Assembly: GCF_006345805.1 (NCBI RefSeq)
Contig: NC_043004.1
Location: 37,448,001-37,512,000 of the forward strand
Source: Octopus sinensis
Lineage: Eukaryota
Direction: 5' to 3'
Length of the DNA: 64,000 nt
Below the pieces are notes generated by a model. That model saw nothing but the letters and a program-made list of their open reading frames with translations. It made no database searches and had not been told where the DNA came from. The translations under genes were made by a program, and so were the position numbers. Below are positions 4,555 to 60,616 of this stretch, one piece after another. Every line of letters begins with the position of its first letter. The first letter of the stretch is position 1.

Positions 4555-4681
4555 ATCAACAGAATCAATGTTACATCTGTCTTTAATTAGCTTCAACAAT
4601 GGCTTCACAGCTAAGAGCAGTGTCGTAGTACCACAAGTTTTCAAAATAAAACGCCGTTTTGTAACAAACATGCTGCTTTCA
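4555..4681 (-). CDS. AMD1: AdoMetDC coding exon 3 ([43 protein letters not shown]), with the Glu-Ser autocleavage/pyruvoyl site
   Basis: 127-nt exon, TTGCAG acceptor, GAT|GTGAGT donor. The [19 protein letters not shown] motif is diagnostic of eukaryotic AdoMetDC. Confidence 0.98.
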
Positions 4682-6039: not shown

Positions 6040-7120
6040 ATATTGTTGTATTTCGGAATGGTCATTTTGCCAGTTTAGCCAATAAAAACACACACACTAT
6101 ATATTTGGTGTTACTTTGCTTCAGTGTTATTTATTTTTTACATTAATCTTAATCTTATTTCGGCCAGAGTTCTTTCGTCACACTCTTGTGACCGCATCAG
6201 TGGTCCTTTGTTTTCTTCTTTCTTATCTGTGTGTCTCTCCTTACTAACCGTCAGCCATTTTGTATTTCTATTGTATGTGTCTTCATTTGCGCATGCATAT
6301 ATCTCTATGTGCGTCTATGTTTAGTTAGTGTGTGTGTGGGGGGGAATGCCTGTAATATTTGTATCTTCTGTTTATATACGTTCGTGTAATTTTTTTTTGT
6401 TCATGTTTACATCCACTTATTATCATTATTATTACGTATGCTTGTATGTATGTATGTATGTATGTATAACAATAAAACTAGTAATAACAATAATAATAAA
6501 ACATTTTTAAAAAAATTTAATTAAAAAATAAATTTTTTAAATCTTTTAAATTTAAAAAAAAACCTATATAGTTATTTATTTCTATTTGTTTATTTATCTG
6601 TGTATTTTATTTATTATGTTTTCGGTTTTGTTTATATTGTAACCAGTTTATGGGGATCCTCTACCATCATGTTGTGGTGTGTGCTAGTGTTCCATTCCAG
6701 TTTCCTATTCAGGCTAGGTTTATCTTCTATTATGTGTGTAGCTTCCGTAATTTGTCTGATTGTTGCATCTGTTCTATGTGTGGACAAGATTTTAACCTCT
6801 ATGTTGTTGATTGATCCCCTGTGTTCCTGCTCAGCATGTTGGTACAGAATCGATGAGCTCTTTCCTTCCTTAAGTTCTCTCCAATGTTCATTTTCCCGCT
6901 TGTATGCCGTTTCCCCTATGTATGTCGTCTTGTTACTGCATCGTCCCTCTATACATCTTATACTATAGACTACATTTCTGGCTTTACAGTGTGTTTGTGG
7001 GCTAAATCTACACACAGTACAGTGCCTATCCGTACAGGGGGTTCTACTAAAAGGGTAAGTTCTACCGATTATGGATTTGATAGGGTTGCCTGGCTTTTCA
7101 ACAACCTTAATCCTTAGTTA
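6040..7120 (-). mobile_element. Penelope-like element 3' remnant: Cys-rich linker, GIY-YIG endonuclease and pseudo-LTR
   Basis: KVVEKPGNPIK...CTDRHCTVCRFSPQTHCKARNVVYSIRC...TYIGET...EH...SILYQH...LNRKLEW. Homologous to the copy at 37250. Confidence 0.85.
6162..6206 (-). ncRNA. Degenerate hammerhead-like motif in the Penelope pseudo-LTR
   Basis: GGACCA CTGATG CG GTCAC AAGAGT GTGAC GAAA GAAC TC TGGCC: perfect 5-bp stem II, A9 replaced, stem I imperfect. Confidence 0.45.
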
Positions 7121-8965: not shown

Positions 8966-11169
8966 TAAATATCTGGTTATGAGATATAATATATAACATA
9001 TAATATAACGTTTTGGGATTTGGTTTGCAAGATTCTTTATATGAGTTCATGTGTTAGAACATATTCTATTGTGTCTAGGGAGAGTCATTTTGACACAATA
9101 GAATATAACACCACACAATATATAATATTTGACAAGCAGTGAAATTATTGAAACGAAATCTATATTACAAATTAAATGCTAAGTCTATAAATACTCTTTA
9201 CTCTGTTAAATACTCACATTGAATCAGCAGAAATAAACTCATAGTAATAAATAAATAGCATACCACTAATATATAGTATATTTGATTATTTGGTAAGATA
9301 TTACAAAATACGAAAAATATACGAGAAATATTAAAATATTGAAATTTACAAAAATCATGAATATTTGGTAATCATGTAATGAAAATAGGCGTTATATACA
9401 TACTTACATATATATATTCATACCCAACACACGTATTTTATCCATATATACACATACATATACAATATACACACACACACACATATATATCATCGTCGTC
9501 GTCGTCATTTAACGTCCACTTTCCATGCTGGCATGTGTTGGACAGTTTGACTGAGGACTGGCGAGCCAAGAGGCTGCACCGGGCTTCAGTCTGATCTGGC
9601 AAAGTTTCTACAGCTTGATGCCCTTGCTAACGCCAAACACTCCGAGAGGGTAGTGGGTGCTTTCTCATGCTACTGGCACGAAGGCCAGTCAGGCGGTTCT
9701 GGCAATGACCACACTCAAAAGGTGTTTTTACATGCTACCTGCACGGGAGCCAGTCCAACAGCACTGGCAACGACCACGCTTGAATGTTGTTTGTCATGTG
9801 CCAGTAAGGCGATGCTGGCAACGATCACGCTCGAATGGTGCTTTTTACGTGCCACCGGCATGGGAGCTAGTCAGCGGCCCTAGCAACAATCACGCTCAGA
9901 TGGTGCTTTTAACATTCTACTGACACGAGTGCCAATCAGGCAGTACTGTCATCGGCCACGTCAGCAATATATATAAAATAAGGTAAAATAAAAGAACATG
10001 TTCATATATATATATATATACACACACACAGACCCTCACACACATATAACACAATCATATATATATACATACACATGCACACATATATATATACACACAT
10101 ACATATAATACATATACACACACAAGCATACACATAAATATCCACACACACATACACATAAGTTTACACACACATGTAAACACCCATATGGATAAATAAA
10201 AATATATCTTTATTCATATGAATATATGAATAAACACTTACAAAAAGGGATTCAGTTCTTTGGGTAGCAATACACTTGGGAGGATTTGTACAAGAAATAA
10301 ATTTGGCACTAAAATAAGGCTAAGTTTAATTGCAATTATAGAGAGAAACAAAGAGTATTTGGAAAAGGATAGAGATAGAGATTAAAGGAAAATAATAAAC
10401 ATATGTGATATTACGAATGTATAAAAGTTCTTTGCAATTATAGTAAAAAGTATTCAGGTCAGGATAGAGATGAAAGAAATGTAATTTTATGCGCGGTAGT
10501 TTGTCATAAGAGTTATTGGAATACACTCTTGGAGTGGTTGGCATTAGGAAGGGCATGAAGCTGTAGAAACTTTGCCAGATTACAATGGAGCCGGGTGCAA
10601 CCTTCTGGCTCAGCCGTCCACAGTCAAATTGTCCAACCCATGCCAGCATGGAAAGCGGGCGTTAAACAACGATGATGATTATTATTGTTGTTATATCTAT
10701 CTTCAACTGTTGTATTATTCACATCAACAATTATGTCTATATTATTATCATTAGTGGAGCTGACACAGGTATCTGTTTGGGATTTCTTGTAGTATTTATT
10801 TTATCATTATTATATCTGTGTGTACTTCTAGAATTTATGAATTTATTTTTATTTTTATTATTATTATTATCAATGTTCTTATCATAGACATCATTATTAT
10901 TTCCATTATTATAAGGAATATATTTAATTTTATCCTTATAACCCGCATTTCAGAGTGCTACATTATATTTTTCTTTAAGTAGGACACCGCTCATATATAT
11001 CTCACAACCAGATATTTATGTTAATATTCAAATGTTGAAATATATGGAGAGTAATTGTTATAAATAAATAGCTCTTCGCATAGTTTAACGGTTACCTCCC
11101 TTTAGCTACATTTTTTTTGCATTTAAATAATTTTTTCAATTAGAAATATACATACACAAACATTGGGAA

Positions 11170-13910: not shown

Positions 13911-13997
13911 CTTAAAACATAAGCATCCATATCTGCATCTTTCTGATAGCTAATTATTTCAACACGGACATTTTTAAGCAGTTCTGCCCATTCTTGT
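13911..13997 (-). CDS. AMD1: AdoMetDC coding exon 2 (R-QEWAELLKNVRVEIISYQKDADMDAYVL-S)
   Basis: 87-nt exon, pyrimidine-rich TTTAG acceptor, AG|GTAATA donor. Phases match exons 1 and 3. Aligns by eye with human SEWDILLKDVQCSIIS...EAYVLS. Confidence 0.95.
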
Positions 13998-24917: not shown

Positions 24918-26795
24918 ATATACACGCACACAAAAAAAACGCTTTGGCAGTATTTTTCTATGTAATTGATGTAGAGTTGGAGTAAATGTACAACTGCATT
25001 TGGAGAATAGAGTATAAACCAGTGTAATGTCATCTGTGCAGAGAAAGCGTGAAAGTTTTGAGATACTGAAAGATCAGCCAAGTTATAAGATAGTAAGTTT
25101 TAGGGTGGTGTACATGTGGGGTTTGAAGTTTATTGCAATACAAAGTGTTCTTCCTTACATGTTTATGTTATCTAATGTATAATGTATAACTTGAACAATT
25201 CTGTTGTTTCCATCATGGGTTATCTGTGAGCCCTCAAAATATGAAAGTCCTTTTACTTTCTTTACTGAATTTTATATGTGAATGAACTGGATGTGTTGCA
25301 TGTAACTCTTAATATTTTTCTCTTCTGTCTATTTGGAATGATGTCGAAAATGAAAGCGGATTGTTTTCACATCACTTTTCTGTTTGTAGCTATGGTTGTA
25401 AGCAGATGTAAGGTTGAAATAAATGTATGTGGGGAATAATGGAAGAAGTAAAACCCTATGTATTCAAGGCTATTTTTGTGTTGTTTAGCACCTGGTCTGA
25501 CCTCATCAAGCAGACTTATGCTTTTCTGAAACAGTGTATCTAAAACTAAATTCGTATTTGATTTCTTTGGCGTTGTTTGTAAGATGTGGGACAATAGATT
25601 TGTGCAAAATATGGCTAAATGAGTTACAATGGTTTACGTTTGGTCGCATAACACAACACTTCTCTTTCGTTTGTTCCGTTATGTATGTTTTGGGGTTTGT
25701 AGAAAGTCGTGTTGGTTAAAATCAAATATTAGTGGAATGACTCTTGCGCTACTCTGCTCGGGAATTTTTTTTTTTTAAATCTACACACAATTCTTCTAAA
25801 TGTTAAAGAATTGAGAAATCATTGCCAGCCAGCGATTTTCTTCATTTTTTAATTTAATTTTTTTATATTTACTTCGATGTTTACTTTCAGTAAAGCAGAA
25901 TTTGTATTTCAATACCTCCTGTAGCACAGATTCAAAATAATAAAGTGGAGGGAAGTTAATAATCTATTGATTAGGTACGACGCACGTGTTGAGATAAGAA
26001 TTTGTTTAATGTTTAGATACATCTTATGCAAACAAACAATATTTATTGCACCCATTCATTTAACTCTTGCACATATCGGCGATCTTTCGCACATATCTAT
26101 TATATTATTATTATTATTATTATTATTATTAGCGGAGTGAAGCGCATTTCGGTATTTCGTCCGTCGCTACGTTCCGAGTTCAAATTCCGCCGAGGTCGAC
26201 TTTGCCTTCATCCTTTCGAGGTCGATAAATTAAGTACCAGTGAAACACTGAGGTCGATTTAATCGACTTAATCCCCTCCCAACAAATTTGAGGCTTTTTT
26301 GCCTCTAGTAGAAAGGATTATTATTCAATTAGCTATTTTATCAAGGTATCCGCTTGAGTTTTAAAAAAATTAACGCATGGCGGCAATCAAACATTTATCG
26401 ACGAGCAGGACTTATTTTTTTCTTTTTAAGAACAAAACTAATTGAAAAAAAAATAAGCCATAGATATATAAAGAAAGCGAAAATATTTCGTTTAAAAAAG
26501 AATTTTACAAAGTTTTGGATAATGGGGAAACTGAGAAGTTCAATGTCCTGATATTTTATCTGAGATAAGCAATAAACTATTCTTTCAATAGAAAGAGAAA
26601 AACTGTCAGAAGTGAAATGTTGTGAAGGAATTCATCTGTAAAAGGCAATAAGGAATTTGTAAATATGTTTACTGGCTGTTTGCAAACATAATTAACGATC
26701 CGTTTTAACAGTTTAGTCTGTTCTTTAGATTAAGTTACATAACAAGCATGACATGGAAATGAAATCAACCTAAAAGAAAATAAACTAAAACTTAC

Positions 26796-26893
26796 CGAGA
26801 AATTATTCTAAGATCCCTAGAATCACTGGAAGGTGAGAACCAGACTTCGAGCAATTTTTCAGTGCCTTCAAAGAAATGAGTTGCTGAAGCCAT
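26796..26893 (-). CDS. AMD1: S-adenosylmethionine decarboxylase proenzyme, coding exon 1 (MASATHFFEGTEKLLEVWFSPSSDSRDLRIIS+CG)
   Basis: Hand translation contains HFFEGTEKLLEVWFS, as in the human AMD1 N-terminus. 98 nt, phase-2 donor CG|GTAAG. Confidence 0.97.
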
Positions 26894-26904
26894 AATTGGT
26901 GGAA

Positions 26905-26949
26905 TTAATGAGAAATGTGGTGGAAGAAAGACGAGTTGATGTGAAGCAT
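26905..26949 (-). other. uORF2 in the AMD1 5' leader (MLHINSSFFHHISH-stop), ending 11 nt before the main ATG
   Basis: 45-nt ATG-to-TAA frame read directly, out of frame with the main ORF. Confidence 0.65.
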
Positions 26950-26956
26950 CGAGGAA

Positions 26957-26986
26957 TTAAACACTTCTCTGCTGAATAAATTTCAT
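26957..26986 (-). other. uORF1 in the AMD1 5' leader (MKFIQQRSV-stop), in frame with the main ORF
   Basis: ATG AAA TTT ATT CAG CAG AGA AGT GTT TAA read directly. Whether it lies in the mRNA depends on the unmapped TSS. Confidence 0.55.
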
Positions 26987-27008
26987 TGATTTACAGGATT
27001 GTCGGTCG

Positions 27009-27017
27009 CTTCCGGAA
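27009..27017 (-). promoter_or_regulatory. ETS-type CCGGAAG motif near the presumed AMD1 start site
   Basis: TTCCGGAAG on the minus strand ~120 nt upstream of the ATG in a locally CpG-containing patch. Function is inferred only. Confidence 0.35.
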
Positions 27018-27377
27018 TATTTCTAAAAGAATACAAATCATTTATTTTTGTTCAATTATATTTTATATTAAAATTTCTGACAAAAGAGTTGTTGGCTATA
27101 AGTTTCCAGTAAGGACAATCGAGGGTTTGCTGCATTTTGGATGGCGAGCGACAAGGGAGCATTTGTGCAATTGCATATGGAACAAATATTTCAGAGAACT
27201 TTATTCGAACAACACCGTTTTTTCAGTTTCTAGCCTTAGTCAATAAATATACTATGGGCTTCCACACTGTTTCCGTTTATCAAATTCCAATCACAAGGTA
27301 TTGATCAATCCGAGATTATGGTAGAAACACTTGTCAAAGGTGCCTCACAGTAAGATCAATTCCATACTACGTGTTTG

Positions 27378-28452
27378 CGGTACTACTTGAGATCAGCGGT
27401 CCCGGTGCTCGCACTCGCGTAGTCGCGCATCTGCGCTAGCTAGTCGTGACTAGTCGATCCTATAACGACCAGCTAGCAAAGTGAATAAAACACAAAATAA
27501 ATCATTTTTTTACACAAAGTAAATAATTTGGGGATCTTTTCCTTTTGAACGGCAGTTTTCAACACAATTTCTAGTTAACTAAACACTTTTAAACTTCGTA
27601 TACTGGTAGAATGTGTTTATAAAACATCATTTTTTCTTGGCTTTATTGAGAAAATTCTATAGTTTGTAAGATATTTCCACTTTAAAATTGATCATTTCGG
27701 CAATTTTAACCAATCGCTGACCTCCATTTAGGTAAACAACATTCCGTGCTGTATGAATATGTCCCTCCTTTAAGAAACAGATTGGGTTTATTTACATTTG
27801 CGAAGAAAAAAAATACTCTTCCCCCACCTCTAACCCTAACCCTAAAACAGATTGAAATGCAATAGATCGATACTAGGGTTATAATTATGGGTGACAACTT
27901 CATACGACACCCCTACGGAAAATGGGATTTTTTTCTAGCGGTGTCAAATGAAAATGTCACCCATAATTATAACCCTAGTATCGATCTATTGCATTTCAAT
28001 CTGTTTTAGAGTTAGGGTTAGGGGTGGGGGAAGAGTATCTTTTTTTCTTTGCAAATGTAAATAAACCCAATTTGTTTCTTAAAGGAGGGACATATTCATA
28101 CAGCACGGAATGTTGTTTACCTAAATGGAGGTCAGTGATTGGTTAAAATTGTCGAAATGCTCGATTTTAAAGTGGAAATATCTTACAAACCATAGAATTT
28201 TCTCAATAAAGCCAAGAAAAATGATGTTTTATAAACACATTCTACTAGTATATGAAGTTTAAAAGTGTTTAGTTAACTAGAAATTGTGTTGACATATGCT
28301 GTTCAAAAGGAAAAGATCCAATAATTTTTGTTAAACAAAGTAAATAATTTTTTAAACAAAGTAAATAACACACAAAACACAAAGGATCGACTAGTCACGA
28401 CTAGCGGATGCGCGAGTGCGCACACCGGGACCACTGTTCTCAAGCAGTACCG
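27378..28452. mobile_element. Nested foldback element: 380-bp inner arms (27532-27911 / 27940-28319, head-to-head GGATC-MITE dimer) inside outer arms (27378-27461 / 28383-28452)
   Basis: Arms read as reverse complements. Flanked by ~110-bp direct repeats at 27269-27378 and 28452-28561. Confidence 0.85.
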
Positions 28453-31400
28453 TTTTCGTTTACCAAATTCCAACCACAAGGTATTGATCAATCTGAGATT
28501 ATGGTAGAAACACTTGTTAAAGGTGCCACACAGTAAGATCGAATCCATACTACGTGTTTGCAAGGCAAATTGCTTAACCATGCAAGCAGCACTGATAATA
28601 AATTAAATCAATATCGTCACACAGGTCCCAACTTTTATAATTTTTCTCGAAACGGAGAAGAGTCGCCAACTGAATCAGTTTATGTAATACCAATATTTAT
28701 TTTCTCCATCACGTAAAATGATAGAAAAAGTTAACCCTGCATACTGTAAATCCCAAACTTTATTAAAATATCTAATACAACATTCTACTATGTCAGTTGT
28801 CAAAGTTTGGTGAAAGTCTTTAGATTTTCAAGAAATGAAATCCTGTGATGTTCGCTTTTTTTTTTAGTTTTTTTTCAAGGTCATTAACAGTGAAGTGACT
28901 TGCCGGGAATTTACTGGAGACTCGGTACAGTAAGAGCCAGTCTCATAATATAATAATCGACCCTTTTCAAGAAATATAGTCAAACTTTATACAATTTGAA
29001 ATTGTCTTGGAATATTTTTAATGTTTACATTACTACATTTGAATATTTATATTGCAAATAAAGATCAACGTCCACATATGGGAAAGTTTGTTGAGAAAAA
29101 CTTCAGATGTGGACAAATCGTTTCAAACATCCTAAACATACTCCATGGGAAGCAATGGCTACATTAAACCACTCGTACTCAGTTTATTCTATCTTCACCA
29201 CATCCCCTCTTCTACTGCCTGCCACCATCCTGTATTATTTTGATTGCCAGAATACTCTTCCTTTTTTCTCAGACCTCTGTAATCAATCTATCCCCTGGGC
29301 CATATAGATATAGGTTTTTTCTCCATTTCAGTTATATTGCCTTAAATACTGATACATATCTCAGAACACTGTACTTCTATCAATCATATATTTCTCATAA
29401 CTACAATGTGAGCTCCTTTTAATTGTGACAAGGACATGGCTACTTCTCCAGTACATTACAAATAATACACTCAGTACACTGTATAAAGTGTGAGGTTGTA
29501 AGGACCCTCTAATTTTGTCAAGGACCTGGAGCTGATGGCACAAAAAAAAAGAGTTCTCAGTACACTCTGTAAAGATGTTGCTGTTAAAAAGTAATTCCAG
29601 CTACAGAAATGAAATGTGAGCAAGAAAAGGTCCCCCAATTCAAGCAACTCCTGCCAGTACAGACAGTGGGTGTAAAAGAATAGTGGAGGTGGTGGTGGTG
29701 ACGATGGATGAAGTCTACATATTTTGGTATCTGCTGCAGTGGCTTAAGACAATAGGTTGCAAATCTTTTAAGTTGTCACCTAACCATCTAGTATCTAACA
29801 GATTGAAAGAATGATATAGACTGTGAAAGTGGAATAGAGCCCAATGACAATGACTATAAGAATCTAGCTATACTAGAACTCATCATCATTATTGCTTAAC
29901 ATCTGTCTTCCATGCTGGTATGGGTTGAACAGTTTCACAGGAGCTGGCAAGGCTGGAGAGCTGCACCAGGCACCATTGTCTGCTTTAGCATGGTTTCAAT
30001 AGCTGGATGCCCTCCCTCACACCAACCACATTACAGACTGTACTGGGTACTTTTTACATGGTGCCAACACCAGTGGGATCGCCAAGTAACTTGCAAGACA
30101 AAGACCTTTCGTCTAGGAGTGGGAGAGGTACTGAGCAAGGTGGCTTTGTACCAGTTGAGAAGTTAAAATATAATACAGGGATAGAGATAAGTGTCTTACT
30201 ATGGAGGGAATGTTTGGCTACCCTCATAGTAAAAGAAAGGAAGATTGAAAGACAGAGTGAGAGAGAGAGAAATAGATGGCGTTAAAGATGCATCAGGATC
30301 TAACCACAGCAGTACAGCGGGGGGTGGATACAAGTAGCTCGGAGGGGATATAGAGAGAATGTTCTATAAGAGTGTAAGAGATGAGGAAGAGGTGACTGTA
30401 ACAAGTGATGGTGGTAGTGACAGGGAGGGGGGGAGTACGGTAGATATGTGAGGGCATAGAAAGTGTGCAAGAAGGCATATGAAGAAGGGTGAAGGGGCCT
30501 GCAGTGGATAGTGATTATGGGTCATGGAAAGGTGGTGTTGGAAGATGGGTTGCAGGGGATAAATTGTGTTTGTGAGGGAGTGTCATGGCTGTAAAAGATG
30601 TGCCTGTATGTATGGTCACTACTTTACTTAGCTTGATGTCTTTCCAGTCACAACAAATCACTAGAAGTCTCAGTCCCTTGTCAACTCCTCTCTGAGGTTT
30701 AACATCTCAAGATCATTTTTCACCACTATATCCCACATCTTCCTGGGTCTGCATAAGAAAATATTGTCCAACAATAAAAATCTTTTATTGTACTAACTTA
30801 ATTTAAGGAGTCATAAATGTGATCAATACATAAGTAAGGTGGGAAAAATAAAATAGACACATTAGACAAAAAATGAGAAAAACCACGCATGGATCACTTC
30901 ATCCAAAGGGAAATGTCTGTCATCTAAAAATATATAAAATAAAGGATGTCTGTGTGTGTGTCTCTCTCTGTGTAGTATGTATGCATTTCTACCAATTTTC
31001 ACCAAACTTTACGCACACATTACTTATGCGCCAAGCATAGTCATGCACTATAATATTTTGCCCAGAACTTCCATATAAAGTGAGAAACCAAGAAAAATGG
31101 TGCTTTACAAGGGGTTTTCTCTAAAAGCTTATGCAGTTTTTGACCGATTCTCTCCCCTCTTTTTTTCACATTCTCTATTTCTCTTGCTTACACATATTCT
31201 CTCTCACCCTCTGTAATAGTTCCTCTCTTTTGGTCTATGCCTGTTTCTTTCATTCTCTCTCTCTCTCTTTAACACGCTAATTTCTGTCTACGAATTGCCT
31301 TCCCTCTATTTCAATTAGTTGCGTGTAAAAATCTCTGTTGTTACAGTTTTTGTACATTCTCCCTAAAAAATAGTTATTTTTAATTTTTCTTCGCCCAGTG

Positions 31401-37159: not shown

Positions 37160-38450
37160 TAGAAACAAAGAATATGGAATAGGATACAAAGAACTTGCGA
37201 CAAAGCAAACAGGGCGAACACGTGGTATAAAACTGACAAATATCAAGGAGTGATGTTTGTAGAGACCACAGCACATGGAGAACTAACCTGTAGATTTAGA
37301 AAAGCTCTGAAGGAGATCAAACTCAACATTAAGATTGTTGAAAAGCCAAGGAACTCTGTCAGATCACAACTATGTAGGACGTACCCTTTTGAGAATACCA
37401 TATGCACCAATGATAACTGCATGGTATGTAGGATTAGCCCTGGCATTAACTGTAGAACTCGAAATGTAGTTTACTGCATAAGATGCATAGAAGGTGCTTG
37501 TAAAGAAATGAACATGACATACATAGGGGAAACGTCTAGGAGCATTGTGGAACGACTAAATGAACATCTAAGACAATATCATGACAAAAAGCAGTCCTCC
37601 ATACTCTACCAACATGCCAAAGACTACCACGGAGGCAACTTGGGTCAACTTGACATCCACATCTTATCCAAGCACCCAAAAGACCCAACACTCAGACAAA
37701 TACAGGAGTATGTCCTTATAAATGAAACCTCCCCAATACTAAATAGGAAATATACATAGTAGATATAATACCTCCATAGCCACAGTTTACACAGGTAGAG
37801 TAGAATAGTTAGTGGACTGTTATATAGATAGATGTGTGTGTGTATATGCACATGTTTTTTTTTTTATGTAAGCATATGGATATGAAAATAAACAGATCAA
37901 GATACAGACGGATAGGTACATAGGTTATAAGAACAGACAAGCACACATACGCAAATGGAGACTGACACACATGACCATATATACACACACTTTACTCCAC
38001 ACAAGGACACATATGAAGACACATATCCACACATGAAGAGATGCACATCCACCCATACATACAAACATGGTACATAGTTGTATAACATAGTTGTAATTGT
38101 CTCGACCACGGTCGAACAATGATGATGATGTATAACACGCACACACACAAGGAGACAGAGGTGTATACATATACAAGCACATGCTCACACACACATACAT
38201 AGAAAATACACGGACATGCAAGCACATGAATATACAGAATACATACATACAGATACACACATATATACATACATACACATGCATACATACATACACACAT
38301 ACATATGTACATGCATGCATCCATAGGCACACACACACTCACTGACCCACACATGTGCACAAACAAACAAAAGGTAACACAGTGGAAATAACAGACAGTC
38401 AAGACTATTGAAAAGGTTGCAAGACGCAACAAAAATTTTAGGAAAATAAA
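37160..38450 (+). mobile_element. Penelope-like element 3' part with an open 169-aa GIY-YIG ORF (37250-37759) and microsatellite-rich pseudo-LTR, in TRAPPC1 intron 1
   Basis: NTWYKTDKYQGVMFVETT...CTNDNCMVC...NCRTRNVVYCIRC...YIGETSRSIVERLNEH...ILYQH...LNRK. Confidence 0.88.
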
Positions 38451-43014: not shown

Positions 43015-45394
43015 ATATATATTTATAAAGTTTAATGAAATCTATGCAATGATATGTGTTGCCAAATGTTGTAAAAATTTAAGTAATTGTATATTATTAA
43101 AAATATTTCATTAAATATATACAATAGTATTTTGGTATTCTGTATATATGTTCTTTCTTTTCTTTTTGTGAGTACTAAGTAGAATGTTTCTTTTGGAAAT
43201 TAAAAAAAGATAAAAGTTATACTACTTTAACAACTTCTTGGGTATTTATAATTCAATCACCACATTTATTTAACATTTTATTTTTATGATAATACACATA
43301 CCCTTTACTATATAATACATTTTACCAGAAACCAATGCTTAAAATAAAGATACATTATTGAAAACAACGGGTTTTTTGTGTTGTTGATTTGTGTGACATT
43401 TTTATCAATTTAATTAGATGTATTTCAAATTTATTCAGAATAAACTGTAGAATCAAAACCAAAAAGAGAGCACAAATGGTTGAGTTGAAAGAGTATCAGA
43501 CAACCAGCTGAGAATAAATGGTTTGTATCCCTGTCACCAACAAATGTATTGTAGTTATGGCCAATGCATTCAACTCTCAAACATTAAATTTATATGGCAT
43601 TGAATCAAAACCAGTACTAATTTACTAATATAAGCAAACATTGAATAGTAAAATTGCTGAATATTTTGTCAGCTTTTTCATCCATTTAATTCACCAGACA
43701 TCAGCATTAGAGATCATTAAAATTTAGATTATCTAAATGTGAACACAAAGCACTGATGCTAAATTAACCAATATCCTTAATTTAAAATGTTTGCTTTTAA
43801 ATAATTCATTATATTGAGTTTTATTTGCATTTGTTTAGCTTTGAGGTCTTATATTCTTCCCTGCACAACTGTTTTAGCAACTCCTCTTCAATACTTGTTT
43901 ACTAGCCAGATCATTCATCATCATCATTTAACGTCCGCTTTCCATGCTAGCATAGGTTGGATGATTTGACTGAGGTCTGGCGAACCAGACTCCAATCTGA
44001 TCTGGCAGAGTTTCTACAGCTGGATGCCCTTCCTAATCCAAACCACTCTGAGAGTGTAGTGGGTGCTTTTACATGTCACCGGCACGAGGTCCAGTTTGGT
44101 GGTACTGGCAACGGCCACGCCCAAATGGTGCTTTTTATGTGCCACCTGCATAGGAGCCAGTCCAGAGGCACTGGTGACAATCTCACTCGAATGTTTCACG
44201 TGCCACCAGCACTAGTGCTAGTAAGGCGACGCGGTAACGATCATGCTCAAATGGTGTGTTTAACATGCTATCAGCACGAAGGCCAGCTTGTTGCTCTGGA
44301 AACTATCTCACTCGTATGGAACTCTTAGCGCTCCACTAGCAACGGATGCCAGTCACCGATTTTGATTTCAACTTTGATCATCATTAATTAAAGTCTGTTT
44401 TCCAAGCTGGCATGGGTTGGACAATTATATGTTGTTGTTTTTTTTTTGGGGGGGGTCTTTCTTTTTTTTTTTGCTACCAGCATTGGTGAGGTTGCCAAAT
44501 AACTTACAAGACAAGAAAAAGTCTCTTGACTGGGTTGGGGTGTATTTGAGAAAGAGGTAGGTGGATTTATGCCAGGTGTTGAGAAGGAACAAGCACAAGT
44601 CTTATGTTAGGAAGATGCATGACTACCCTGCAATTTTATAAAGGTGGGTGAGAGTAGTTGGAAAGAAGATAAAGGTACAAGAAGGTGAGTATAAGACAGA
44701 ATACAGAGAGTGGAAGAAGAGGAACAGATGGTTAGAGATGAGAATAGAGGTTAATGTGATGATGAACAAGGATGGAGATGTGGTTGGTAGTAAATATCAG
44801 TATGGAGAGTAAGGAAGGTGAGAGGGTGTGACAAGTGGCAACATATAGATAGATTAGAAATTAAGGAGATGATGTGTAAGAGTGAGTGGGGGAAGGATAG
44901 TGTCGGAAGATGGAGGCATATACATGTGGCTATAGTAGTGTTGAGGCATTGATGGCAGATATGAGAGGGTGTTAAAGATGAGGTGTGTAGCTCAGAGTAG
45001 AGTGAAATACGGCACAGAAACAGGTGATCAGTAAAAAGACTAGCGTGAGGAAGGGATGCAAATGAACGGTTGTTAACAGAAAGTGGTGCCAGAGGAAGTA
45101 GGAGATAACTAGATGTGCAAAAAAGGTGAAGGTGAAATGTGCTGATTCTGATCTGAAGTGATTACAGTTGCTGAGTAATGCCATAGTTAGATGATAGAAG
45201 GATGGGTGTTAAGAAGATGAGATGTGGGGGATGATTGATGGGACAGACTGGGTGCATGGGCTGGATCTAGCATGTACAGATATAAACAAAATGCTTTTAA
45301 GAGAAATGTGTGGATAAGATAATTGTGGTATGTGATAGGATTACTAAGCTTAGAATAGCCTTGTCTGATGTAACTGTGACTGTTGTACCTTCTG

Positions 45395-46330
45395 CACCTT
45401 TCTAATTTCCTCCAGACTTCTTGGCTTCTGCAGAAGGCTCTAATGTGGCCTTTTTGGCCACATTTAAAGCAACGAGGGGTTCTGCTCTGCACCCACACTC
45501 TCAACACTACATCTCCAATGGTCACCGTTTCCACCACATTTTCCAGTGTTTCTGCAATACCCTGTATGATCAGGTCCAATGTTTGGCCTTTCCATACTGA
45601 ATTTTCTGTTTACGTGGCTTGGAGGACAGCTATTTCTTCTTTATTTCCTAGAAGAACAATCGCCGCAACCTAAGCCACATTTATTTCCGGTGGGATTCCC
45701 TCTTCCCTAATTCTGGAACTCCTTCCAAGATAAGTGGGTAAAAAGACCACTTTATCCGACTTTTCTGTGGTTACTGCGTGTTCTTTTGCTTTTCCTTTAA
45801 ATGAACCATAATTGTTCCGTATCTGCTTCCACTGCCAAGATATGCTATGTCTTGCCTTTTCTATTACTTCTGCCTCAACATTTTCAATCTTCCTTTCTTC
45901 CAAAGAGTACACCTTATATATCACTGTTTTCTTATCCATCTCTTCCAATACTTCCTGGGGTGGTGACAACTTAACATCACCACCTACCTACCCTACATAC
46001 CATCTTCTCATATTTTTCTGGTTGTCAGGCCCACCTCCTTTTTTTTGTGACTTCTGTCATTTCTGCAAAACTTTTCTTCCTTAAGCACTTGTCCATCCTA
46101 TCAACTGCTCGTACAAGCTCCTCCTCCGAAGAGGACAATTCGGACCCACTAAGGTCTGAATGGAACATGTTTTTTACTGTTGACGTTGCTGACCCTCCTC
46201 AAGGTGGAGAGAAAGCACAACCAGAAGACCGCTGCAAAGCAGCGTAAGACGGTCGACTACTCTTCACACAATCAGTAAACACATCAGCATGATACGAACT
46301 CTACGAGAGAGAAAGGAGAAAGAGAGGCGC
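45395..46330 (-). mobile_element. Gag-like/ORF1 retroelement remnant with a CCHC zinc knuckle, probably non-LTR
   Basis: RTPRCFKCGQKGHIRAFC (CX2CX4HX4C) preceded by a Lys/Glu-rich ORF broken by stops. Confidence 0.65.
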
Positions 46331-50732: not shown

Positions 50733-51130
50733 TCAGAAATTTATCGCCGTTCTCTTTGAGTATATAAAAGGGCCATCTACCTGAAGGGATTTGTGATTTG
50801 TCTGCTTTCTTACTAAGACTTTGATTTTTTTTTCTAGGTTAACGCTAAGGCCCTTCAATTCTAGACCTTGGTTCCACATCTGAAACTTCTCTAGTTCTGG
50901 TAGTGATTCAGTTATAAGAACAAGGTCATCAGCATAGAGGAGCTCCCAGGAGTAGCACAACTTAAATTCTTCTGTTATTGCCTGGAGGATGAACAAGAGG
51001 GAACTGAGGACTACTCCTTGGTGAACCCCTACTTGTACCCTGAATTCTTCACTATACTCATTGCCAACCCTCAACTTACTGACAGTGTCCCTGTACATAG
51101 CTTGTACAGCTCTCACCAACCACTTGTCTA
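50733..51130 (-). mobile_element. RTE-clade LINE RT core fragment in MED28 intron 1
   Basis: VQAMYRDTVSKLRVGNEYSEEFRVQVGVHQG...WELLYADDLVLI. Confidence 0.9.
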
Positions 51131-55818: not shown

Positions 55819-56178
55819 GAATTCACAGACTTGGAACAAGAATTGCTCCGCAAAGAATCTTTGCTGCAGAAACATCAACACCGTCTCCAACAGTGGCAGA
55901 GTCTATTGTGTAATCTACAGTCTGCTCAACAACAAACAAGTCTACCTCAGCCTACTTCTAAGCTTTCTCAACAACCGCAATCAGCAAGTAACTCAATGCC
56001 ATTGCATACAATGCAGTCAAATATGGCCAATTATTCCCAACATCCACCACCCTCGAATCCAACTGGAATGCAACCTACTTCTCAGTCCCTTGTCATGCCT
56101 CCTCCTCAACAACCAGGTTATCAACAAACTCCACTTGCTTTTCTCGAACAGACAATGTCTAACATTGGAATGCCATAG
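55819..56178 (+). CDS. MED28: MED28 exon 4 (EFTDLEQELLRKESLLQKHQHRLQQWQ...PLAFLEQTMSNIGMP-stop); joined CDS 202 aa
   Basis: TATTTTAG acceptor, in frame with the 55831-56178 ORF. LAFLEQ matches human LAYLEQ. AATAAA at 56216-56221. Confidence 0.94.
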   Translation, partial: EFTDLEQELLRKESLLQKHQHRLQQWQSLLCNLQSAQQQTSLPQPTSKLSQQPQSASNSMPLHTMQSNMANYSQHPPPSNPTGMQPTSQSLVMPPPQQPGYQQTPLAFLEQTMSNIGMP

Positions 56179-60022: not shown

Positions 60023-60616
60023 ATGGAAAAAAATATTAAAGAGTTTGAAATGCCTTATTTCGATAGAGGATATATGCAAGCTTCTATGAGAGTTTTTCCT
60101 CTTGCTTGGATGGATCTGGTTTGCTCAATTAGAAGCAAGTTTTGCAGCAAACAGAATACCAACAGAGGTTGGTATAGCATTATGTTAACTAATTTACCAT
60201 CACCTCTGAGCAATGAAATTAGAGACTTATTGTTAGATCCTACCAAACCATTTTCGTATTTTTCCATAAAGGAAGAGATACTAAAGAGGACTTCCAGCTC
60301 CAAGCAAAAAGAATTTGCTAAACCGTTCAATACCAAACTACTAGGTGACAGAAAACCTACTCAACTTCTTCATAGAATGAAAGAACTTCTTGGAAATCAA
60401 CAGATAGAAAAATCTTGTCTTAAAGAAGTTTTCTTTGGCAGGTTACCTCAAAACACTCAAACTCTACTTTCAGCGGTGAAAGAGCAAAACTCTCTCAAAC
60501 AATTAGAAGATTTGGCAGATGGTATTTTGGAATTATCATCTAGAGAGTCTGTAAATGCCTTGTCCTCCATTTCTTTAGACTTACAGTCGATGAAAGAAAA
60601 ATTTCACTTGGCTTGA
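60023..60616 (+). mobile_element. Ty3/Gypsy gag-like remnant
   Basis: LPSPLSNEIRDLLLDP...SIKEEILKRTS...LGDRKPTQLLHRMKELLG...FFGRLP...LADGILE. Confidence 0.8.

What the first reader, a model, noticed from the sequence alone, without database searches (positions are those of the whole stretch)
26905..26986. Two tandem AUG uORFs in the AdoMetDC leader: candidate cephalopod polyamine-sensing module
Seen: uORF1 MKFIQQRSV-stop (26986-26957), a 7-nt gap, uORF2 MLHINSSFFHHISH-stop (26949-26905), then 11 nt to the main AUG. Known: AdoMetDC translation is polyamine-controlled by the MAGDIS uORF in mammals and by overlapping tiny and small uORFs in plants. Neither peptide here resembles those. Inference: this is a differently built scanning/reinitiation switch, possibly with a His/Phe-rich arrest peptide. 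I cannot confirm the TSS or novelty from sequence alone.
Basis: partly seen in the sequence, partly recalled or inferred. Interest (0 to 1): 0.7.

Follow-up and report, generated by a model that had tools for sequence, protein, structure and literature searches.

The report
Short upstream ORFs before octopus AMD1
The two tiny upstream reading frames before the octopus S-adenosylmethionine decarboxylase gene are really there, but their number is what chance gives in this AT-rich DNA and the two-frame arrangement is confined to one octopus lineage, so this looks like an ordinary leader rather than a new polyamine sensor.

Summary
On the minus strand, uORF1 (26986-26957, MKFIQQRSV*), a 7-nt gap, uORF2 (26949-26905, MLHINSSFFHHISH*) and an 11-nt gap precede the AdoMetDC start at 26893. 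The gene is Octopus sinensis/vulgaris AMD1.

Two AUGs in 93 nt is the chance expectation here (mean 2.2). Both uAUGs have weak contexts (T at -3); the main AUG is strong.

Orthologous loci show the tandem design is not conserved:
- O. bimaculoides lacks the uORF1 stop, giving a 38-codon frame that overlaps the main AUG.
- Argonauta lacks the uORF2 AUG.
- A sister cephalopod lineage has 195-308 nt leaders with no AUG.

uORF2 diverges at or below the neutral rate, evenly over codon positions, so an arrest peptide is unsupported.

Only the uORF1 AUG and its first eight codons are conserved from Octopus to Argonauta. They lie in a block conserved at the nucleotide level, next to an ETS-like CCGGAAGCGACCGA.

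No transcript evidence for the TSS could be obtained.

Best reading: weak, fast-turnover uAUGs that dampen translation by leaky scanning, with uORF1's start possibly functional in octopods. Polyamine sensing is untested. Interest is low to moderate.

The parts
26957..26986 (-). uORF1, 9 codons + TAA (MKFIQQRSV*). Context aaatcaATGa (weak, T at -3). In frame with the main ORF in this species.
   Evidence: The AUG and codons 1-8 are conserved in O. bimaculoides and Argonauta hians. The stop position differs in each lineage.
26950..26956 (-). 7-nt spacer TTCCTCG between the uORF1 stop and the uORF2 AUG
26905..26949 (-). uORF2, 14 codons + TAA (MLHINSSFFHHISH*). Context tcctcgATGc (weak). Found in the genus Octopus only.
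   Evidence: O. bimaculoides has MLHTYSLFLRHISH*. Argonauta has ATT in place of ATG and a 10-nt insertion. Identity is 78% to O. bimaculoides and 40% to Argonauta.
26894..26904 (-). 11-nt spacer TTCCACCAATT, including the strong main-AUG context (A at -3, G at +4)
   Evidence: It is conserved in Argonauta (9/11).
26796..26893 (-). AdoMetDC (AMD1) coding exon 1, from the AUG at 26893 to the GT donor at 26795/26794
26991..27041 (-). Possible third uORF ('uORF0', MICILLEIFRKRPTIL*), if the TSS lies upstream of 27041. Present in Octopus species, absent in Argonauta.
26960..26994 (-). Conserved island C: AAATCAATGAAATTTATTCAGCAGAGAAGTG, covering the uORF1 AUG and 8 codons. Conserved at the nucleotide level between Octopus and Argonauta.
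   Evidence: 15-column windows at 80-93% identity; the two differences both fall on second codon positions and none on third positions. Unique in the window.
26997..27024 (-). Conserved island B, with CCGGAAGCGACCGA at 27015-27002. This is an ETS-like GGAA core; the motif assignment comes from memory and was not tested.
27069..27108 (-). Conserved island A (GGAAACTTATAGCCAACAACTCTTTTGTCAGAAATT), followed by a TATA-like TATAAAAT at 27067-27060. This is the putative proximal promoter. Octopus-Argonauta alignability ends here, at -212.
13911..13997 (-). AMD1 coding exon 2 (87 nt), skipped in the annotated isoform X2
4555..4681 (-). AMD1 coding exon 3 (127 nt), containing the ESSMF proenzyme-processing region. 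The rest of the gene lies off the window.

Best explanation
This is the proximal promoter and 5' leader of the Octopus sinensis/vulgaris AMD1 (AdoMetDC) gene.

The leader carries short AUG uORFs at the density expected from its AT-rich composition. Both uAUGs have poor initiation contexts (pyrimidine at -3, no G at +4), and the main AUG has a strong one.

If the TSS lies upstream (inferred, about 70% likely), most scanning 40S subunits leak past uORF1 and uORF2 to the main AUG. The minority that start at uORF2 are largely lost, because its stop is only 11 nt from the main AUG. In O. bimaculoides the same holds for ribosomes starting at the overlapping uORF1. The uORFs therefore act as a modest, constitutive, peptide-independent damper of AdoMetDC translation.

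The tandem layout is a recent accident of one lineage and uORF2 evolves neutrally. Only the uORF1 AUG is old. It lies inside a block conserved at the nucleotide level (islands B and C), which may be a DNA or RNA cis-element, a maintained regulatory start codon, or both.

Shown here: sequence, gene identity, contexts, chance expectation and cross-species pattern. Inferred: TSS position, leaky scanning and the damping effect.
For: - Sequence and gene identity.
- uATG count equals chance.
- Contexts: uORF1 tcaATGa, uORF2 tcgATGc, main attATGg.
- uAUG turnover among octopods: O. bimaculoides has 4 uATGs, including an ATGTAA start-stop and a 38-codon overlapping uORF1; Argonauta has only uORF1, with a different stop; O. 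vulgaris is identical to the window.
- uORF2 is 78% identical between Octopus species against an 83% non-coding baseline. Its substitutions fall 3/3/4 by codon position, against 4/3/11 in CDS exon 1.
- The sister cephalopod lineage (tree support 100/100) has no uAUG in 195-308 nt of transcript leader.
- Gastropod and other mollusc AMD1 transcripts carry unrelated uORFs.
- The leader shows no stable or covarying RNA structure (z = +0.45).
- General background: uORF start codons are often maintained while peptides are not, uAUGs usually sit in weaker contexts than CDS starts, and the Kozak score correlates with initiation (PMC7889888).
- Leaders of related mollusc AMD1 transcripts are at least 157-390 nt long. 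This favours a TSS upstream of -93.
Against: - No transcript, CAGE or Ribo-seq evidence was available, so the TSS is inferred only from a TATA-like box at -174 and from conservation ending at -212.
- The uORF1 AUG region is as conserved as the coding exon over the Octopus-Argonauta split. That is more than a purely neutral uAUG would show and leaves room for a specific function.
- AdoMetDC is the classic polyamine-regulated uORF gene in vertebrates and plants (PMC2811004), so the prior for regulation is not low.
- Only three independent octopod lineages could be compared.
- The O. bimaculoides 2-nt difference rests on a single assembly.
Confidence: 0.55

Rival explanations
1. A polyamine-responsive uORF switch. 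uORF1 would act as a short, permissive uORF. After it terminates, 40S subunits resume scanning, are not yet competent at the uORF2 AUG 7 nt on, and reinitiate at the main AUG 63 nt downstream. Ribosomes that skip uORF1 and start at uORF2 are lost. Polyamines would shift the balance, either through start-codon stringency at the weak uAUGs or by stalling at termination.
For: - The geometry in O. sinensis/vulgaris fits a plant-like 'protective plus inhibitory' logic.
- The uORF1 AUG is conserved from Octopus to Argonauta.
- AdoMetDC leaders are regulated this way in vertebrates and plants, and uORFs are reported in AdoMetDC leaders of diverse metazoa (PMC2811004).
Against: - The architecture is not conserved. 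uORF1 overlaps uORF2 and the main AUG in O. bimaculoides, uORF2 is absent in Argonauta, and the sister cephalopod lineage has no uAUG.
- The uORF2 peptide is unconstrained.
- Neither peptide has the C-terminal features of known polyamine-responsive uORFs: no MAGDIS, and no penultimate proline (PMC2811004).
- The uORF1 changes are non-synonymous (Q5L, Q6R), and its stop position moves between lineages.
Confidence: 0.15
2. The uORFs are partly or wholly outside the mature mRNA. The TSS would lie at or downstream of the ETS-like block (about 27015-26950), so that uORF1, and possibly uORF2, is promoter DNA. Alternatively uORF1 would sit too close to the cap to be recognised. Islands A-C would then be conserved because they are transcription-factor sites or core-promoter elements.
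For: - Conservation in island C is at the nucleotide level: 0 of 8 third positions changed, against 11 of 33 in the adjacent CDS.
- Island C is adjacent to an invariant CCGGAAGCGACCGA. ETS-type GGAA motifs typically lie close to TSSs of housekeeping genes (from memory, not tested).
- Octopus-Argonauta alignability is limited to -212..+107, the size of a core promoter plus first exon.
Against: - AMD1 leaders in related molluscs are at least 157-390 nt, so a leader under 90 nt would be unusual.
- A TATA-like box at -174 (27067-27060), partly conserved in Argonauta, predicts a TSS near -145 (inference).
- The -16..-1 region and the main AUG context are conserved, as expected of a scanned leader.
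Confidence: 0.2
3. The leader is spliced. The sequence TTCTTTTAG|AAATATT at about 27026 would be a 3' splice site, and an unseen non-coding exon further upstream would contribute more leader, possibly with further uORFs.
For: A polypyrimidine tract plus AG is present in O. sinensis/vulgaris and in Argonauta.
Against: - The AG is absent in O. bimaculoides (TTTTGAAAAT).
- The sequence immediately upstream (island A and the TATA-like box) is conserved, like a promoter rather than an intron.
Confidence: 0.08

Closest known systems
Vertebrate AdoMetDC (AMD1) MAGDIS uORF
   Same: Same gene, with a short AUG uORF in the leader. If the octopus TSS were near the ETS-like block, uORF1 would also be cap-proximal, like MAGDIS, which starts 14 nt from the cap (PMC2811004).
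   Different: There is no sequence similarity (MKFIQQRSV / MLHINSSFFHHISH against MAGDIS), and the lengths are 9 and 14 codons rather than 6. The peptide is not conserved. There is no evidence of termination stalling or of a polyamine response.
Plant AdoMetDC tiny/small dual uORFs
   Same: Two uORFs in an AdoMetDC leader. In O. sinensis the geometry could in principle give a 'protective upstream uORF / inhibitory downstream uORF' logic.
   Different: The plant pair overlaps by 1 nt, with a tiny uORF of 2-3 codons and a small uORF of 48-55 codons whose peptide is conserved and ends in Pro-Ser (PMC2811004). Here the uORFs are separate, 9 and 14 codons long, without proline, and the arrangement is not conserved even among octopods.
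AdoMetDC uORFs reported in other metazoa, fungi and algae (Ivanov, Atkins & Michael 2010)
   Same: uORF(s) in the AdoMetDC leader of a non-vertebrate metazoan. The review already states that such uORFs occur in diverse metazoa and arose several times.
   Different: Those uORFs are said always to have a penultimate proline, except in vertebrates and sea squirts. The octopod uORFs end ...SV*...SH* and ...LI* and have none. The supplementary alignments of that paper could not be read here.
Generic weak-context uAUG/uORF translational dampers
   Same: AUGs in poor Kozak context upstream of a strong main AUG; rapid gain and loss between species; start codon sometimes maintained while the peptide is not (PMC7889888).
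   Different: Nothing specific. This is the class the evidence fits best.

Membership tests
Vertebrate MAGDIS-type AdoMetDC uORF | Hexapeptide MAGDIS, or a close variant with C-terminal Asp-Ile-Ser | tested here: not met
   The peptides are MKFIQQRSV and MLHINSSFFHHISH.
Vertebrate MAGDIS-type AdoMetDC uORF | uORF AUG about 14 nt from the 5' cap | not testable with these tools
   No octopus transcript or TSS data could be retrieved.
Vertebrate MAGDIS-type AdoMetDC uORF | Peptide-sequence-dependent, polyamine-enhanced stalling at termination | not testable with these tools
   This needs toeprinting, Ribo-seq or reporters. Indirectly, the peptide is not conserved.
Plant tiny/small AdoMetDC uORF pair | Two overlapping uORFs (1-nt overlap): tiny of 2-3 codons, small of 48-55 codons | tested here: not met
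   The uORFs are separated by 7 nt and are 9 and 14 codons long.
Plant tiny/small AdoMetDC uORF pair | Conserved small-uORF peptide ending in Pro-Ser | tested here: not met
   There is no proline, and the peptide differs at 5 of 14 residues between two Octopus species.
Non-vertebrate AdoMetDC uORFs of Ivanov et al. 2010 | Penultimate proline at the uORF C-terminus | tested here: not met
   The uORFs end ...SV*...SH* and ...LI* (Argonauta), and ...FF* in the O. bimaculoides long form. The criterion is from PMC2811004.
Conserved-peptide uORF (CPuORF) in general | Amino-acid sequence under purifying selection across species (synonymous changes outnumber non-synonymous; length and stop conserved) | tested here: not met
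   uORF2 substitutions fall 3/3/4 by codon position. Both uORF1 changes are non-synonymous, and its stop position differs in all three octopod lineages. The sample is small.
Generic regulatory uORF (start-codon-level conservation) | uAUG maintained across species | tested here: met
   This holds for uORF1 only. Its AUG is present in O. sinensis, O. vulgaris, O. bimaculoides and Argonauta hians. It is not met for uORF2, and no uAUG is seen in the sister cephalopod lineage.
Generic regulatory uORF (start-codon-level conservation) | uAUG lies within the transcribed 5' leader and is translated | not testable with these tools
   No octopus cDNA, CAGE or Ribo-seq data were accessible. The inference rests only on the TATA-like box and on leader lengths in relatives.

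The most novel reading that the evidence does not exclude
uORF1 (MKFI..RS..), whose AUG and first 24 nt are conserved between Octopus and Argonauta, could be an octopod-specific regulatory uORF of AMD1 that is maintained by selection. It would be an independent origin of uORF control of AdoMetDC, unrelated to MAGDIS, to the plant pair and to the penultimate-proline class. It might work through polyamine-sensitive recognition of a weak-context (possibly cap-proximal) AUG rather than through an arrest peptide. uORF2 and the other uAUGs would be neutral passengers.
Probability: 0.15. Interest if true: 0.5.

Novelty: new member of a known kind. Interest (0 to 1): 0.25.

Why it matters
AdoMetDC is the textbook case of metabolite-sensing uORFs, and it is an open question how often such control arose independently in animals. 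If the octopod uORF1 were shown to respond to polyamines, it would add a further independent solution, in a lineage with unusual RNA biology. As the evidence stands, the main value is negative. The tandem layout is a lineage-specific accident, the 'His/Phe-rich peptide' is unconstrained, and sister cephalopods manage without any uAUG. The locus should therefore not be treated as a cephalopod polyamine-sensing module without experiments.

Tried and rejected
1. Octopus transcript evidence for the TSS.
   - Protein searches with the N-terminal 104 aa found no octopus transcript fragments.
   - Exact look-ups of the 86-aa antisense ORF spanning the promoter found nothing.
   - Two metagenome/metatranscriptome pattern scans, for octopod exon 1 and for island C, found nothing.
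2. Homology between the octopod leader and the sister cephalopod leaders. MAFFT and short-word blastn found nothing beyond ATGGCTTCAGC at the start codon.
3. A conserved RNA structure in the leader. The MFE z-score is +0.45 and there are no compensatory pairs. Rfam gave no hit in the whole window.
4. Readthrough or an N-terminal extension. uORF1 is in frame with the main ORF, and the intervening frame encodes two PP motifs. This was rejected because the frame relation (0 in O. sinensis, +1 in O. bimaculoides and Argonauta) and the PP motifs are not conserved.
5. A 5'-UTR intron acceptor at about 27026. This is unlikely because the AG is missing in O. bimaculoides.
6. Species identity of the Logan runs SRR8281681, SRR29271459 and SRR24189489. 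No paper was found, so they were placed only by a tree, as sister to octopods.
7. The supplementary alignments of Ivanov et al. 2010 are not held.

Full report
**What is there**

- uORF1 is ATG AAA TTT ATT CAG CAG AGA AGT GTT TAA at 26986-26957 (MKFIQQRSV*).
- A 7-nt spacer, TTCCTCG, follows.
- uORF2 lies at 26949-26905 (MLHINSSFFHHISH*).
- An 11-nt spacer, TTCCACCAATT, follows.
- Then comes ATGGCTTCAGCAACTCATTTCTTTGAAGGCACTGAAAAA... at 26893.

A local tblastn with an AdoMetDC probe, together with the splice sites, gives three coding exons:
- 26893-26796
- 13997-13911
- 4681-4555

The rest of the gene runs off the window. The 104 encoded residues are 100% identical to S-adenosylmethionine decarboxylase proenzyme 1 of Octopus sinensis (XP_029639940.1). 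The gene call and the cephalopod call are therefore correct.

- uORF1 is in frame with the main ORF (93 nt apart).
- A third uATG at 27041 opens a 16-codon frame (MICILLEIFRKRPTIL*) that ends 5 nt before uORF1.

**Is it more than chance?**

No, as far as the count goes. The window is 36.6% G+C. Taking every ATG in the window as a mock start codon, the 93 nt upstream hold 2.2 ATGs on average. About 60% of mock starts have at least two, and about 12% have at least two with all frames closed before the mock start. Dinucleotide-preserving shuffles of the leader give 1.4 ATGs per 130 nt and 3.0 per 215 nt, against 2 and 3 observed.

The initiation contexts are informative. uORF1 (aaatcaATGa) and uORF2 (tcctcgATGc) both have T at -3 and no G at +4. 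The main AUG (ccaattATGg) has A at -3 and G at +4. By the established rules of scanning, the uAUGs should be leaky and the main AUG efficient. A survey of 478 eukaryotes reports the same general pattern for uORFs, and that Kozak score tracks initiation (PMC7889888).

**Comparison with relatives**

Orthologous genomic loci were fetched for three octopods:
- O. bimaculoides (L002)
- Argonauta hians (L003)
- O. vulgaris (L015)

In each the main ATG is at position 10001. The four leaders compare as follows.

| Species | uORF1 | uORF2 | Other uAUGs in about 230 nt upstream of the main AUG |
|---|---|---|---|
| O. sinensis (window) | 9 codons, in frame with the main ORF | 14 codons, MLHINSSFFHHISH* | uORF0 at -148 |
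| O. vulgaris | identical to the window | identical to the window | identical to the window |
| O. bimaculoides | 38 codons; crosses uORF2 and ends 25 nt into the coding sequence, frame +1 | MLHTYSLFLRHISH* | uORF0 at -146, and a minimal ATGTAA at -101 |
| Argonauta hians | MKFILRRSLI*, with its stop one codon later than in O. sinensis | absent (ATT for ATG, plus a 10-nt insertion) | none |

The O. bimaculoides difference is two bases: it has AGAAGTGTAATT where O. sinensis has AGAAGTGTTTAATT. That removes the uORF1 stop. Because Argonauta shares the shorter form at this spot, the in-frame TAA that makes the short uORF1, and hence the tandem layout, is most simply a derived feature of the O. 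sinensis/vulgaris lineage.

A second cephalopod lineage is represented by Logan transcript contigs:
- L001 (one species)
- L004-L013 (a second species)

Their proteins are sister to the octopod clade with 100/100 support, inside molluscs. Their leaders have no ATG in 195, 282 or 308 nt. This is a mild depletion against shuffles (P about 0.07-0.11 each). They show no alignable similarity to the octopod leader.

AMD1 transcripts from other molluscs carry unrelated uORFs, none with a penultimate proline:
- L016, which groups with the heterobranch gastropods: a 42-codon uORF and MSFLTCC*.
- L019, a mollusc of unresolved position: MQYRFRS*.

**Constraint**

O. sinensis and O. bimaculoides non-coding DNA around the gene is about 83% identical. 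Against that baseline:
- uORF2 is 78% identical.
- uORF1 is 93% identical.
- The ETS-like block is 100% identical.
- CDS exon 1 is 94% identical.

CDS exon 1 between Octopus and Argonauta shows 4/3/11. uORF2 therefore shows no sign of peptide-level selection.

Between Octopus and Argonauta only -212..+107 is alignable at all. Within it there are three islands:
- Island A: 27108-27069, followed by a TATA-like TATAAAAT at 27067-27060.
- Island B: 27024-26997, with an invariant CCGGAAGCGACCGA.
- Island C: 26994-26960, which is the uORF1 AUG plus its first eight codons.

In island C the only two differences are at second codon positions (Q5L, Q6R), and none of the eight third positions changed. 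At the third-position divergence of the neighbouring CDS (11/33), eight unchanged third positions have a probability of about 0.04 (my arithmetic). The constraint is thus on nucleotides, not on the encoded peptide.

The block is single-copy in the window. The leader has no unusual or covarying RNA structure, and Rfam finds nothing.

**Transcription start**

The TSS is the weak point. No octopus cDNA could be reached with the available collections. Three pieces of indirect evidence favour a TSS upstream of uORF1:
- A TATA-like box at -174, partly conserved in Argonauta, would predict a start near -145.
- The conserved region ends at -212, as a proximal promoter would.
- Related mollusc AMD1 leaders are at least 157-390 nt long.

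On the other side, a GGAA-core ETS-type motif such as CCGGAAG often sits close to TSSs (my knowledge, not tested). That would put uORF1 at or very near the cap, or outside the mRNA. A splice acceptor at about 27026 is unlikely because the AG is missing in O. bimaculoides. I put about 70% on both uORFs being in the major mRNA.

**Mechanism**

The best-supported reading has four parts:
- The leader carries weak-context uAUGs that most scanning subunits bypass.
- Ribosomes that start at uORF2 terminate 11 nt before the main AUG. In O. bimaculoides, those that start at the overlapping uORF1 terminate after it. In both cases they are largely lost to the main ORF, because reinitiation needs distance (established scanning rules).
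- The net effect is a modest, constitutive, peptide-independent reduction of AdoMetDC synthesis.
- uAUGs come and go quickly in this leader: four in O. bimaculoides, three in O. sinensis, one in Argonauta and none in the sister lineage. That is what weak or no selection gives.

The exception is the uORF1 AUG. Its persistence inside a conserved block leaves open a real, octopod-specific function, either as a maintained regulatory start codon or as part of a DNA-level element.

But it cannot be a conserved module, because two of three octopod lineages lack the geometry.

**Comparison with the known**

The vertebrate MAGDIS uORF and the plant tiny/small pair are described in PMC2811004. That review also states that uORFs occur in AdoMetDC leaders of diverse metazoa, fungi, plants and algae, arose at least three times, and always have a penultimate proline except in vertebrates and sea squirts.

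The octopod uORFs meet none of the sequence criteria of these classes: no MAGDIS, no overlap, no long conserved small uORF and no penultimate proline. Functionally they resemble generic weak uORF dampers. A uORF-bearing AdoMetDC leader in an invertebrate is therefore not new in kind. The particular octopod uORF1 block appears undescribed: literature searches found nothing on cephalopod AMD1 uORFs.

**Verdict**

Interest is low to moderate. The one thing worth following up is the conserved island B/C with the uORF1 AUG, and the first step is simply to map the TSS with existing octopus RNA-seq.

Noticed in passing
window 27266-28561: A ~1.07-kb near-perfect long palindrome (nested inverted repeats 27378-28452, arms 84-100% complementary) is flanked by 113-nt direct repeats (27266-27378 and 28449-28561, 92%). 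It sits about 370 nt upstream of the AMD1 start. O. sinensis -1556..-464 has no counterpart in the O. bimaculoides locus. This looks like a lineage-specific foldback-type insertion or palindromic duplication in the promoter region.
   Followed up: partly
window 26991-27041 (-): A third upstream ATG opens a 16-codon frame (MICILLEIFRKRPTIL*) ending 5 nt before uORF1. It is present in the Octopus species and absent in Argonauta. Whether it is transcribed depends on the TSS.
   Followed up: partly
L002 9900-9905 (O. bimaculoides): A minimal start-stop uORF (ATGTAA) lies 10 nt upstream of uORF1, created by a single C-to-A difference relative to O. sinensis (CCTGTAA to CATGTAA). It is another sign of rapid uAUG turnover in this leader.
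   Followed up: no
window 13911-13997 (-): Exon 2 is 87 nt long. The annotated isoform X2 (297 aa, in O. vulgaris and O. sinensis) is an in-frame skip of exactly this exon. It removes 29 residues just upstream of the ESSMF proenzyme-processing site.
   Followed up: partly
L001, L004-L013 (Logan transcripts, sister cephalopod lineage): The AMD1 leaders of a non-octopod cephalopod lineage (two species) contain no ATG over 195-308 nt. They carry a long T/CT-rich tract just before the start codon. The gene caller had placed the start at an internal Met; the true start is ATGGCTTCAGC, 11-12 codons upstream.
   Followed up: partly
window 37250-37759 (+), 6632-7015 (-), 50733-51119 (-), 45187-45579 (-), 60023-60616 (+): Transposable-element remnants are scattered through the window. 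There is a GIY-YIG endonuclease ORF (Pfam E 6e-6), and the 6632-7015 ORF looks like it by eye but had no Pfam hit. There is also a reverse-transcriptase fragment (RVT_1), a CCHC zinc knuckle and a DUF7041 ORF.
   Followed up: partly
window 55831-56178 (+): An ORF whose first 26 residues match the C-terminal end of Mediator subunit 28 (Pfam Med28, E 7.5e-5, below the curated cut-off), followed by a Q/P-rich tail. It may be an exon of a MED28-like gene.
   Followed up: no
window 26098-26131: A (TAT)n microsatellite, about 12 copies, lies in AMD1 intron 1.
   Followed up: no
window from about 33400 onward (+), inferred from L015/L002 gene calls: The upstream neighbour of AMD1 is a Sybindin/TRAPPC4-like gene in head-to-head orientation. 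Its coding start is about 6.5 kb from the AMD1 AUG in O. vulgaris and about 4.3 kb in O. bimaculoides. A V-ATPase subunit E gene lies downstream of AMD1. Argonauta has different neighbours (CSTF2-like and INTS6-like).
   Followed up: no
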